From: Guillardia theta CCMP2712
Taxonomy: Eukaryota > Protista > Cryptophyta
Assembly (NCBI RefSeq): GCF_000315625.1
Contig: NW_005434641.1
Span: 77,113-141,112 of the forward strand
DNA: 64,000 nt
Direction of reading: 5' to 3'
Of this stretch, positions 3,371 through 18,569 are shown piece by piece; position 1 is the stretch's first letter; each line of letters opens with the position of its first letter. A program made the position numbers and the translations under genes. The notes under the pieces are model-generated. The model ran no database searches. It worked only from the letters and a program-made list of their open reading frames with translations, and had not been told where the DNA came from.

Positions 3371-4742
3371 ATGCCGTCGGGGATTGTTATGCGGACCATG
3401 GCGGTAGCGCTGGCAAGCAGCGCGGCTGCCATGGCGTTCATGCCGTCCCCTCAACCATGCAGCATAACAACATCGTCCATCACATGCAAGTCTCCGTTGT
3501 GTTGTCCTCCATGCACACCCTTTTCTCTGCTCGCAAACGGCGTACCTCCTTCGCTTCTTCTCCCAAAGTTAAGATCCAACGCCGGCTCGGGAAAGAGCTA
3601 CAAGGAGCGGTAATGACGCTGCCCACGGCAGTGATGATTCCAATTCCGACAGTCCCGATGCTGAACTGCCATTTCCAGGTCCTTCCAACTTGCACGGACG
3701 TCTGCCAAGGGTCCTGGGGGAGCCAGCGATTGGATTATTGAGGATATGGATGCTGCAGAAGCGGAGGACATGCAAGCTTGGTTGGAGGAGACCTACGAGG
3801 CTGTGGACTATGAGGAGGCGCTGCAACGAGCAGGCTGCCTCTCAGAGTCCGAGCCAGACCAGAGCGAAGCGCAAGAAGAGGATTTCATCGCTGACGAATC
3901 TGCTATGTACATGGAAGAAGATTCAATCTGCGAGGGGAAGGAGAGGGAGTTGACGTATGGGGAGGTGACTTAGTCTGTCCTCTGGCTTCTGCCATCTTGC
4001 ATCTCCCCTATGTCCTCACTCCCCTGTCCTCTCTCCTCCAACCTTTCTTCGCTCCTTAAAGCCTTGGGCTTCATGCTGATTGTTGAATTCCCCCAGATGG
4101 ACCTTGCTTTCTTCGTCGCTCTCCTGCGGAAGATGCGGACGAGGGTCAAGACCGACGGGAACTTCTTTGACGTTGGGTGTGGGCGAGGGCAGCTTGTTCT
4201 CGCAGCTGCCAAGACGGGGTGGGCCAATAGTGACTGATCGCCTGCTGCGAGCTGACGATTATTTAGTTCTTCAAGAAGTGCGAAGGGATAGAGATCATGA
4301 AGGACGTGCTGGAGATTGGCAGAGGAGCGATCCTTGTGCTTGAAGGAGGGGGGATGCCGAGCTCAGAGTGCGTTCTGCACGAAGGGGATATGTACACGAG
4401 CATGGAACTGTGCAAGGACTCGGACCTGATCTTCGTGTATGCCACCTGTTTCGCCACCACCGACGGAGTGAGAGGAGGAGGGAGGAGAAGGAGGGAGGCG
4501 GGAGGAGGAGGAGGAGGGAGGAGGGAGGGCAGCTGACCGGTGGGTTGACTGCTGTTGGGAGGTGACGATCAAGAAGCTGTCGAACGCTCTTGCTGCGCAT
4601 ACGAAACCCGACGCCAGGATCATTACGGTCAACAAGAAGCTGAGCGAGGTGGATGCCACAATTATGCTGTTGCCTGCGTTATAATGACGATGATGCTATG
4701 ATGGCGATGATGATGATGATGATGATGATGATAGAGATGATT

Positions 4743-8959: not shown

Positions 8960-9688
8960 TGTGTTCGAAAGTTTCGATGGTGTATTGCTCGATAGCGACC
9001 TGGGGCGAACTTCGTGTCTCACTGGGATGGCACCGCCGCTGCTTCCGCTCCCTTGTGCTAGTCTGAGCAAGCTCATGTGCTGTGCCAGAGGATCGGCATG
9101 CCTCCTGTCAAGTATCGGGTCGTATCGTACACTCGAGCTCCAGGTGATGTCTGCAAGCAGATCAGATCACTCAATCCCTGTTGAATCGAAGCGCTCGTGT
9201 CGCAGGACAGGCGTTCAACTGAGGATTATGATGATAGGAAACTTATTGAATCAGAAGTTGCTGAAGTTGTCGTCGAGGCTTCAGGCATGCTGCATACAGT
9301 GGTGGGACCAAGACTACAGACCGACGTGTTTGAACGTTCATTTTCATTCACTCTAAACACAAAACAAACTGAAACATCAATTGGGCCATAGCATTGTCTC
9401 TCTAAAACTCATTTACAGCTGAATCACCTTGCCGCTTACTCCATACATCCTCGCCTTGCTAGTGATGAGCATAATTGCTCTTTGCAAGCATTCCAACTGC
9501 TTTCGACGGCAAGGGCAACCATATCGAAAACTTCTGAAGAGTTCATCGCTGTCCTCGTCTTCAAAACCAGACAGAATTTCCTTTCCAGCAAAGTCTGGAG
9601 CACTAGCAGCGTTGTACTGAACTAAGTCATAAAACTCATCGTTATTGCCACAAAAATTCGTCGCAGTTTCCATATTCAATTGCGGCAT
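8960..9688 (-). CDS. Hypothetical protein, probably multi-exon
   Basis: 91-aa ORF 9413-9688 with a gtaagc donor near 9440 and further open segments downstream. No recognised domain. Confidence 0.3.
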
Positions 9689-14350: not shown

Positions 14351-17274
<2,924 letters not shown>

Positions 17275-17276
17275 AG

Positions 17277-17375
17277 TCGCTGCTATCGCTAATCTCCCCC
17301 GCTCGTTCTCGTTGCTGCTCGCTCAGAGCAACTTGAACTGTCGGCTCTCAGGAGCGGGGAAGACGATAGCAGCGA
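17277..17375 (+). other. Long RNA hairpin immediately 3' of the TrxR stop codon
   Basis: TCGCTGCTATCG (17277-17288) is the perfect complement of CGATAGCAGCGA (17364-17375). The inner CCCCGCTC pairs with GAGCGGGG. Confidence 0.7.
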
Positions 17376-17377
17376 GT

Positions 17378-17403
17378 TGGCCCTGGGGTTCGCCTCGGGG
17401 CCA
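17378..17403 (+). other. 11-bp stem with UUCG tetraloop in the TrxR 3'UTR
   Basis: TGGCCCTGGGG-TTCG-CCTCGGGGCCA pairs fully with two G-U pairs. Confidence 0.7.
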
Positions 17404-17424
17404 TGGCGGTTGTGAACCCTCGAG

Positions 17425-17494
17425 CGTCTGCTGCTATGAAGATCTTGTCAGAAAGTTCGCCTCACGGCACTGGCAAGGTACGAGCTTTACGACG
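17425..17494 (+). promoter_or_regulatory. Eukaryotic SECIS element (type II-like)
   Basis: ATGA core at 17436-17439, helix II ATCTTGTCAG/CTGGCAAGGT, apical AAA at 17452-17454 (11 nt from the core), mini-stem GCC-TCAC-GGC, GA at 17482-17483. It lies ~170 nt downstream of the in-frame TGA. Confidence 0.88.
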
Positions 17495-18569
17495 GTATCA
17501 CACTGCGCCTCATAATGGCCTGCAAAGATTTTAATTACGTGTTGTGACAAGTGCGTTCAGTAAATTATCTAACAGGCAGCTTGTTGTTTTCAGTCATATT
17601 TCCATCTCCTTCCCTGACTGTCTTTGCAAGCTCTCATTGATTTCAATGTAGACAGTTTGGTCGCTTCAGACAAGTTTTGCACGTGCACGAATCCGACCAT
17701 GAACTCTCGATCAGAAGGGGAAGCTGCGCGTGTTTAACAGCATGCAAGGACAGTTGCAAGCTTCTGGCATGTAAAGATTCCTGGAGCATCATATCTATTC
17801 AAAATCCAGCGAATCATGAGTGGTACCCCGAGTTGCAGTGCTGGCAGACGTGTAATCATGCCATAAAAGCGGTACAACAATCAAGGTGAAAGGTCAATAG
17901 GGCAGCCAAGTTGCCAACCCGACGACCTCGAGAGGGATGAGGTCAGGGATGGCTGCGAATTGAGAACAACCTGACCGCATGGAGGGGCAGTTACTGGAAA
18001 GTTGACGTGGAAGAACAAACACGTGTATGCTTGACTCAGAGGCACGTCCCACGAGTCGGAGCTCGCTGTTTTCAAACTTATCTAAGAAGGAGAGTGGTGA
18101 GGAGGCAGTTGGGGTAACAGAGTTTCGATTCAGTCAATGCTGCGGTGGGGCGTTCACCGGTACGTGGGACGATCTTAGTCGACTGAGGGACGCTGCTAGT
18201 GCTTAATCAGATAAGCGAGCAGAGCCTCGGAGGGAGGGGTAGGAGCAGTTAGAGCTGTAAACTCGTCACAATGAGTATCGTTCGCCCGGCGGCCTCGTGG
18301 ATGAAAGTAGCGCCCACTTTCGTAGCCAGGCCTGTCGGGATGCCACCTGATTCGGAGCTGATTCAGCTTCTTCTTGCGCTCCATAGCGCTGTGGGTACCG
18401 TACGGTGAAGAAACAAGGTGAGGCTGAAGAGTTGAACATGACTCGGAGGGCAAAAGTCGGACAGCTCGTCTCCTGTCCGATACGGTCGAATCATTCAGGC
18501 TGATCGTGTGTGTCATATTCGTCACGCGTCAGAGTTGAAGATTTCTTTATCATAGTATGGCAAACACAT

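What the first reader, a model, noticed from the sequence alone, without database searches (positions are those of the whole stretch)
17266..17494. UGA recoding: Gly-Cys-Sec-Gly terminus plus a SECIS element missed by the ORF track
Seen: the ORF caller stops at TGA 17266-17268, but the sequence continues GGT TAA, giving the canonical TrxR GCUG tail. About 170 nt downstream is a fold with AUGA core, 10-bp helix II, unpaired AAA, a mini-stem and GA. Established: this is the eukaryotic selenocysteine insertion signal. Automated annotation would truncate the protein by two residues and lose its catalytic Sec.
Basis: partly seen in the sequence, partly recalled or inferred. Interest (0 to 1): 0.75.

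Follow-up and report, generated by a model that had tools for sequence, protein, structure and literature searches.

The report
Selenocysteine UGA and SECIS confirmed
The apparent stop codon two codons before the end of this algal thioredoxin-reductase gene is almost certainly read as selenocysteine under the direction of a conserved 3'UTR hairpin (SECIS); this is textbook biology and mainly an annotation fix, plus one conserved stem-loop right after the UGA that is worth a bench test.

Summary
Confirmed. The + strand reads GGT TGC TGA GGT TAA at 17260-17274. This ends a three-exon gene (14399-17274) for a large thioredoxin reductase (TrxR) fused to an N-terminal DUF4395 membrane domain.

- **Relatives:** nine contigs fetched by protein identity all keep TGC-TGA-GGN-TAA. 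All 14 database models of the family stop at ...Gly-Cys.
- **SECIS:** a type 2 SECIS lies at 17424-17495, with AUGA 170 nt after the UGA. It is the best hit in the 64-kb window for a strict descriptor and for a covariance model built without it. Helix II covaries in four lineages. It scores below Rfam's cut-off (17.6 against 35 bits), as does every SECIS_1 hit in this genome.
- **Machinery:** the genome has tRNA-Sec, SepSecS, SelD, eEFSec and a second Sec-TrxR. PSTK is weak and SBP2 was not found.
- **Extra element:** a very stable rod starts 8 nt after the UGA. Its 12-bp closing stem covaries. Such proximal stem-loops are enriched at this position in 38 Sec-TrxR 3'UTRs. The class is already noted in human TR1, function unknown.

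No RNA reads could be obtained for this gene. Earlier notes of this scan report other selenoprotein genes in the same genome. Verdict: a real but ordinary new member of a known kind.

The parts
14399..15991 (+). Exon 1 (531 codons): P/Q/M-rich N-terminus, DUF4395 membrane domain, and the start of the TrxR FAD domain with the CVNVGC redox centre. The true start codon is not established.
   Evidence: ORF. Pfam DUF4395 1.6e-14 and Pyr_redox_2. GT at 15992. The junction RENIQ|NHIHEL matches the continuous ORF of relative P0001.
16040..16399 (+). Exon 2 (120 codons), NADPH-binding part of TrxR. It is flanked by introns 15992-16039 and 16400-16449 (GT..AG).
   Evidence: Sequence. The junction ETKVM|VRSVVL matches P0001.
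16450..17274 (+). Exon 3, coding part: the rest of Pyr_redox_2, the dimerisation domain with HPTCAEE, and the tail Gly-Cys-Sec-Gly-stop.
   Evidence: Pyr_redox_dim 5.4e-25.
17266..17268 (+). UGA read as selenocysteine (penultimate residue).
   Evidence: TGC-TGA-GGN-TAA is kept in 9 of 9 relatives' contigs that reach past it and in the paralog L145.
17269..17274 (+). Gly codon GGT and the true stop UAA.
   Evidence: The third base of the Gly codon varies among relatives (GGT/GGC/GGA), while Gly and TAA are kept.
17277..17375 (+). Proximal stem-loop (PSL-like rod). The 12-bp closing stem 17277-17288 with 17364-17375 starts 8 nt after the UGA and 2 nt after the UAA.
   Evidence: Fold of 17266-17410: -73.3 kcal/mol, z -4.85, 0/200 shuffles as stable. 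In 5 family sequences 58 of 60 cells pair, with compensatory changes at 4 pairs. Best-stem score 12 against a shuffle mean of 6.8, p=0.00.
17379..17402 (+). Second hairpin: 10-bp stem with a UUCG loop.
   Evidence: In L011 the stem is kept with one change on both sides (G-C to A-U) and two one-sided changes (read).
17424..17495 (+). Type 2 SECIS: AUGA 17436-17439, helix II 17441-17451/17470-17480, AAA 17452-17454, mini-stem 17459-17461/17466-17468, GA 17482-17483. Helix I is short (about 4+2 bp).
   Evidence: It is the top hit of model R2 in the whole window (17432-17487, 14.2 bits, E 0.18 for 128 kb).
17559..17564 (+). AGTAAA, a possible poly(A) signal (inferred only).
   Evidence: The same hexamer lies at a similar distance in L011, and 15 nt before the poly(A) tail of L013. 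No read data for this genome.

Best explanation
The gene at 14399-17274 (+) encodes a large, animal-type thioredoxin reductase (TrxR) carried on an N-terminal DUF4395 membrane domain. Its C-terminal redox centre is Gly-Cys-Sec-Gly. The UGA at 17266-17268 is decoded as selenocysteine. [quoted passage not shown] The ribosome then adds one Gly and terminates at UAA 17272-17274. What is shown: the codons, the fold, their conservation and covariation, and the presence of the Sec machinery genes. What is inferred: that Sec is actually inserted, and that the 3'UTR of this gene reaches the SECIS. A very stable, conserved stem-loop begins 8 nt after the UGA. At that distance it sits at the mRNA entry of a ribosome holding UGA in the A site. 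I rate it as a likely functional proximal stem-loop (about 0.6). I rate the idea that it tunes the choice between Sec insertion and termination at about 0.35; that role is inference only.
For: **Tail and enzyme domains**
- Codons GGT TGC TGA GGT TAA.
- TrxR domains and redox motifs are present.

**Relatives**
- Nine contigs were fetched by protein identity, not by pattern. All keep TGC-TGA-GGN-TAA, with synonymous variation in the Gly codon.
- All 14 family models end in GC.

**SECIS**
- The strict descriptor hit at 17436-17483 is the best of 3 in 128 kb. Shuffles give 2.17 hits, or 0.40 with at least 10 pairs.
- Rfam SECIS_1 matches the full-length model at 17428-17493. E is 3.4 over 4227 families and 2.4 kb. 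My own rescaling to one family gives about 8e-4.
- Model R2, built without the window and its nearest relative, ranks it first in the window.
- Helix II in the family: 82.5% of cells paired, 4 of 8 pairs changed on both sides, covariation 0.587 against 0.298 in shuffles (0/500 as high). Slid controls pair at 22-50%.
- Relatives' poly(A) tails lie beyond the SECIS.

**Machinery and paralog**
- tRNA-Sec, SepSecS (10), SelD (12), eEFSec (52, 67).
- A second Sec-TrxR in the genome has the same UGA-Gly-UAA, stem-loop and SECIS layout.

**Proximal stem-loop**
-.
Against: - There are no RNA or protein data for this gene.
- Rfam SECIS_1 scores 17.6 bits against a gathering score of 35. The best hit in the whole genome is only 27.2 bits.
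- R2's E-value for the whole window is only 0.18.
- The first custom model, R1, missed the element. It also missed other good SECIS elements.
- The SECIS segment alone is no more stable than shuffles (z +0.96).
- Helix I is short.
- SBP2 was not found by an L7Ae scan, and PSTK matched only weakly.
- No canonical SECIS was found in the 3'UTRs of the more distant family members L015 and L016.
Confidence: 0.93

Rival explanations
1. The UGA is an ordinary stop. The enzyme ends in Gly-Cys, and the SECIS-like fold is a chance hairpin.
For: Rfam score below the gathering threshold. The descriptor gives about 2 chance hits per 128 kb. The fold is not unusually stable. No expression data.
Against: A Gly codon and TAA directly after the TGA are kept in 9 of 9 independently fetched relatives and in the paralog. 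The fold sits at the same place in relatives with covarying helix II. The genome keeps a full set of Sec genes. From established knowledge, large TrxRs truncated before Sec are inactive towards thioredoxin.
Confidence: 0.03
2. Both outcomes occur. A sizeable share of ribosomes terminates at the UGA and gives a two-residue-shorter, Sec-less protein. The ratio is set by selenium supply and by the stem-loop beside the UGA. This does not exclude the best explanation.
For: Sec insertion competes with termination in all known systems. SelS, which also has a penultimate Sec, yields both forms, and its proximal stem-loop affects recoding only when close to the UGA (PMC3628699; PMC6844570). A strong conserved stem lies 8 nt after the UGA here.
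Against: Nothing here measures efficiency. Deleting the proximal stem-loop (PSL) of human TR1 did not raise Sec insertion in the one construct reported (PMC6844570).
Confidence: 0.3
3. The stem-loop after the stop codon has nothing to do with recoding. It serves mRNA stability or localisation, or it simply compacts the spacer between the UGA and the SECIS.
For: The function of such stem-loops in TR1 and SelK is stated to be unknown. The insert closed by the stem varies from about 75 to 190 nt among relatives, as expected if only the closure matters.
Against: The 5' arm starts within +6 to +18 of the UGA in 63% of 38 non-redundant Sec-TrxR 3'UTRs. The figure is 0-24% at 14 other offsets, and 10% after 68 other long open frames in this window. 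That position dependence fits a ribosome-proximal role.
Confidence: 0.4

Closest known systems
Animal-type large thioredoxin reductases (mammalian TXNRD1/2/3) and their SECIS-dependent penultimate Sec
   Same: Same domain order (FAD/NADPH, then dimerisation domain). Same N-terminal CVNVGC centre and C-terminal Gly-Cys-Sec-Gly encoded as TGC TGA GGN TAA. SECIS in the 3'UTR.
   Different: This protein carries about 430 extra N-terminal residues with a DUF4395 membrane domain. No paper in the library mentions that combination.
Algal Sec-TrxRs and the published Guillardia theta selenoproteome (Jiang et al. 2020, PMC7539508)
   Same: That survey reports 14 selenoproteins in 12 families in G. theta and lists TXNRD among algal selenoprotein families. 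The genome here has the same size class, and earlier notes of this scan name it G. theta.
   Different: I could not see in the text held whether this gene or its DUF4395 fusion is in their list.
Proximal stem-loops (PSL) of mRNAs with C-terminal Sec (SelS SL1/PSL and SPUR; SelK, SelO, TR1): Bubenik 2013 PMC3628699, Cockman 2019 PMC6844570
   Same: A stem-loop immediately after the canonical stop codon of an mRNA whose Sec is the penultimate residue. It was predicted in 6 of 8 such human mRNAs, TR1 among them.
   Different: Here the stem closes a 99-nt rod. Support comes from covariation and from positional enrichment across many protist Sec-TrxRs, not from mutagenesis. No SPUR-like motif was looked for.
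Selenocysteine redefinition element (SRE) of SELENON/SELENOT
   Same: A stem-loop a few nucleotides 3' of the UGA that favours Sec over termination (PMC8704476). The spacer here is 8 nt.
   Different: SREs lie inside coding sequence. This one lies in the 3'UTR because the UGA is the penultimate codon. No sequence similarity was tested.

Membership tests
Eukaryotic SECIS element (type 2) | AUGA on the 5' side and GA on the 3' side of a non-Watson-Crick quartet | tested here: met
   ATGA 17436-17439 and GA 17482-17483, in register with one unpaired base on each side before helix II.
Eukaryotic SECIS element (type 2) | Helix II of about 9-13 bp between the quartet and unpaired AA(R) | tested here: met
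   11 positions with 10 standard pairs, then AAA 17452-17454.
Eukaryotic SECIS element (type 2) | Mini-stem above the AA bulge | tested here: met
   3-bp stem 17459-17461/17466-17468 with a 4-nt loop in the MFE and centroid folds.
Eukaryotic SECIS element (type 2) | Helix I below the quartet | tested here: inconclusive
   Only about 4+2 bp can be drawn by eye (17425-17428 with 17491-17494). Relatives L012, L013 and L140 have 6-8 bp.
Eukaryotic SECIS element (type 2) | Score over the curated threshold of the Rfam model RF00031 | tested here: not met
   17.6 bits against 35. No site in the 87-Mb genome reaches 35, and the best, at 27.2 bits, belongs to the paralogous Sec-TrxR. The model therefore under-scores this lineage.
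Eukaryotic SECIS element (type 2) | Lies in the 3'UTR, more than about 50 nt after the UGA, and is conserved with covariation | tested here: met
   170 nt after the UGA. Present in L011, L012, L013 and L140, with 4 of 8 helix II pairs changed on both sides. The UTR extent in this genome is inferred from relatives only.
Large (high-Mr) Sec-type thioredoxin reductase | Pyr_redox_2 and Pyr_redox_dim domains with the CVNVGC disulphide and the HPxxxEE dyad | tested here: met
   Pfam hits. [13 protein letters not shown] and GIHPTCAEE are seen in the translations.
Large (high-Mr) Sec-type thioredoxin reductase | C-terminal Gly-Cys-Sec-Gly | tested here: met
   GGT TGC TGA GGT TAA at 17260-17274. Insertion of Sec itself is not testable with these tools.
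Sec-decoding organism | tRNA-Sec, SepSecS, SelD/SPS and eEFSec genes | tested here: met
   72.9 bits, anticodon TCA; 1.6e-125; 5.1e-85; human eEFSec 1e-48 against EF-Tu 1e-11.
Sec-decoding organism | PSTK and SBP2 genes | tested here: inconclusive
   PSTK model: one weak hit, 9.4e-6, far below the cut-off. L7Ae scan: 8 hits. The two weakest, which I read, look by eye like RPS12 and NHP2; the rest are short open frames, and none looks like SBP2. SBP2 is divergent in protists.
Proximal stem-loop (PSL) of C-terminal-Sec mRNAs | Stable stem-loop starting right after the canonical stop codon | tested here: met
   The stem starts 2 nt after the UAA. z -4.85; p=0.00 against shuffles.
Proximal stem-loop (PSL) of C-terminal-Sec mRNAs | Effect on UGA recoding | not testable with these tools
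   Needs reporter or native-context mutagenesis.

The most novel reading that the evidence does not exclude
The stem-loop that begins a few nucleotides after UGA-Gly-UAA is an ancient, position-specific element shared by Sec-TrxR mRNAs from many protist lineages, and by the human TR1 PSL noted in the literature. It acts at the ribosome's mRNA entry to set the balance between Sec insertion and termination at a penultimate UGA. That would make it a third cis-element of recoding for C-terminal Sec, beside the UGA and the SECIS.
Probability: 0.3. Interest if true: 0.6.

Novelty: new member of a known kind. Interest (0 to 1): 0.35.

Why it matters
For annotation, the gene model must read through the UGA. 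Otherwise the catalytic Sec is lost, as has happened in every database model of this family that I saw. For biology, the recoding itself is textbook. Two things add some value. First, the selenoenzyme is tethered to a DUF4395 membrane domain, which another finding of this scan covers. Second, the proximal stem-loop is shown here to be conserved with covariation and to be strongly enriched at that exact position across diverse Sec-TrxR genes. That turns a structure of unknown function in human TR1 into a directly testable, evolutionarily supported element.

Tried and rejected
- **Model R1:** it was built from 7 control SECIS elements with their flanks. It did not find the window's element. It also missed L011, L012, L022 and L062 and scored only its own lineage highly. 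I rejected it as over-fitted.
- **Alignments A3, A7 and A9:** these misplace the GA or the AAA and were not used.
- **Distant relatives:** neither the descriptor nor R1 found a canonical SECIS in L015 or L016. L141 was scanned with the descriptor only, and a run of N interrupts it.
- **Other descriptor hits in the window:** 3810-3846 (+) lies inside an acidic open frame, and 9348-9412 (-) is AT-rich with a long loop. Both are at the chance level of about 2 per window.
- **SBP2:** not found by the L7Ae scan.
- No read-through protein was handed to any tool.

Full report
**Observation**

The + strand reads GGT TGC TGA GGT TAA at 17260-17274. The mechanical ORF 16510-17268 ends ...KKSGC at that TGA. 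ATGA lies at 17436-17439, exactly 170 nt after the U of the UGA. After it come:
- an 11-position helix II (17441-17451 with 17470-17480), with ten standard pairs and one G.A;
- unpaired AAA at 17452-17454;
- a 3-bp mini-stem;
- GA at 17482-17483.

**Gene and protein**

By GT..AG and reading frame the gene has three exons: 14399-15991, 16040-16399 and 16450-17274. Both junctions match the uninterrupted ORF of the closest relative's transcript, P0001 (89% identity over residues 200-531 of exon 1). Pfam finds DUF4395, Pyr_redox_2 and Pyr_redox_dim. The CVNVGC centre and the HPTCAEE dyad are present. It is therefore an animal-type large thioredoxin reductase (TrxR) on a membrane-domain N-terminal extension. 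The start codon is not settled.

**Conservation of the recoded tail**

A word search with exon 1 found about fifteen DUF4395-TrxR clusters. All 14 sequences that I fetched end in Gly-Cys. Contigs encoding nine of them were fetched by exact protein identity, so they were not selected for what follows the stop. Every one that extends past the stop reads TGC TGA GGN TAA, with GGT or GGC for Gly. A Gly codon and a TAA held in frame after a real stop would be unexplained.

**The SECIS**

Four lines of evidence agree.
1. A strict, bulge-free descriptor finds three sites in both strands of the window. This one is the best, with 10 of 11 pairs. Dinucleotide shuffles give 2.17 sites per 128 kb, or 0.40 with at least 10 pairs. 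The chance of one within 500 nt downstream of the UGA is therefore below 1%.
2. Rfam SECIS_1 aligns its whole model to 17428-17493 at 17.6 bits. That is under the gathering score of 35. However, the best SECIS_1 hit in the whole 87-Mb genome is only 27.2 bits, and it belongs to a second, ordinary Sec-TrxR gene. The curated model under-scores this lineage.
3. A covariance model (R2) was built from eight SECIS elements of other Sec-TrxR genes, without the window or its nearest relative. It ranks 17432-17487 first in the whole window, at 14.2 bits and E 0.18 for 128 kb. An earlier model with flanks (R1) missed it, but it also missed other good elements, so it was over-fitted.
4. The relatives L011, L012, L013 and L140 have a SECIS at the equivalent place with quite different helix II sequences. 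On the alignment, 82.5% of cells pair. Four of eight pairs change on both sides. The covariation score is 0.587 against 0.298 in shuffles (0 of 500 as high). Slid controls pair at 22-50%.

Two weak points remain. Helix I is short here. The SECIS segment alone is not more stable than shuffles, which is usual for a fold with a non-canonical core.

**Sec machinery**

The window's own genome (87.1 Mb, 669 contigs) has the following:
- a tRNA-Sec at 72.9 bits that ARAGORN calls SeC with anticodon TCA;
- SepSecS at 1.6e-125;
- SelD at 5.1e-85;
- an exon that matches human eEFSec at 1e-48 against 1e-11 for EF-Tu.

PSTK gave one weak hit. An L7Ae scan did not reveal SBP2. Both are inconclusive.

Earlier notes of this scan call the genome Guillardia theta and report several other selenoprotein genes in it. 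I did not test the name. It fits the genome size, and a published survey counts 14 selenoproteins in that alga (PMC7539508).

**An extra element**

The 145 nt from the UGA onward fold at -73.3 kcal/mol, with z -4.85 and none of 200 shuffles as stable. The fold has two parts.
- A 99-nt rod is closed by a perfect 12-bp stem (17277-17288 with 17364-17375). It starts 8 nt after the UGA.
- A separate 10-bp hairpin lies at 17379-17402.

In five family sequences the closing stem pairs in 58 of 60 cells. The six proximal pairs are invariant, and four of the six distal pairs show compensatory changes. The enclosed insert varies from about 75 to 190 nt.

I then asked whether this is general. A pattern scan of metagenome contigs gave about 48 further Sec-TrxR 3' ends. 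In 38 non-redundant loci, I scored the best stem whose 5' arm starts at +6 to +18 from the UGA.
- At that position the mean score is 10.0, and 63% of loci reach 9.5.
- At 14 other offsets the mean is 7.0-8.2, and 0-24% reach 9.5.
- After 68 other long open frames of this window the mean is 7.1, and 10% reach 9.5.

The class is not new. Cockman et al. 2019 predicted proximal stem-loops in six of eight human mRNAs with C-terminal Sec, TR1 included, and call their function unknown (PMC6844570). The SelS stem-loop acts only when near the UGA (PMC3628699).

**Mechanism**

Shown:
- the codons, the folds and their conservation;
- the presence of the genes for Sec synthesis and delivery.

Inferred from established knowledge of eukaryotic Sec decoding:
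- Sec is inserted, Gly follows, and UAA terminates.
- An 8-nt spacer puts the base of the proximal stem at the mRNA entry when UGA is in the A site. This is the geometry of known recoding stimulators. A helper role is therefore plausible but untested.

**Limits**

In relatives, the poly(A) tails of L012 and L013 lie about 260 and 200 nt beyond the SECIS. The L011 transcript runs at least 85 nt beyond it. No cause or place was named, and I flag it for the operators. SECISearch3 could not be run.

**Verdict**

It is a new member of a known kind. The finding is a sound annotation fix for a Sec-TrxR, with a conserved proximal stem-loop as the one feature that deserves an experiment.

Noticed in passing
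window 14399-15991 (exon 1); proteins P0001-P0015: The TrxR is fused to a DUF4395 membrane domain behind a P/Q/M-rich N-terminus. The same fusion, always ending in Gly-Cys at a UGA, occurs in about 15 clusters. Named sources include Cantina marsupialis, Pygsuia biforma and Cyanophora paradoxa. No paper in the library pairs DUF4395 with thioredoxin reductase. Another finding of this scan covers it (s1-445475).
   Followed up: partly
L145 (G000 C9:796476-799538, minus strand): This is a second, ordinary Sec-TrxR gene in the same genome...LSGC TGA GGA TAA. A 10-bp stem starts at +13, and a SECIS has its ATGA at +91. That SECIS is the best Rfam SECIS_1 hit of the whole genome, at 27.2 bits.
   Followed up: partly
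L009 (G000 C2:791896-792825, minus strand): The SelD (selenophosphate synthetase) match lies in an open frame of 962 aa, about three times the length of the domain. That suggests a fusion with another domain.
   Followed up: no
L001 1500-1664 (G000 C65): The tRNA-Sec gene lies 5 nt from a tRNA-Ala(AGC) gene on the same strand.
   Followed up: no
window 17279-17286 and 17430-17437: The octamer GCTGCTAT occurs in the 5' arm of the proximal stem and again just before and into the AUGA of the SECIS. The 3' arm of the stem (17364-17375) could therefore pair with either site. The repeat is also in L011 but not in L012, L013 or L140, so it may be chance.
   Followed up: partly
control loci L031, L081, L104 and many others (metagenome Sec-TrxR 3' ends): In many unrelated Sec-TrxR genes the stem after the stop begins with the last bases of the stop itself (AAGCC...). 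In three loci the 3' arm contains ATGAAG, which resembles a SECIS core.
   Followed up: no
window 3810-3846 (+) and 9348-9412 (-): These are two further matches to the simple SECIS descriptor. The first lies inside an acidic open frame (3746-3973). The second is AT-rich with a long loop. Both are at the chance expectation of about 2 per window.
   Followed up: partly
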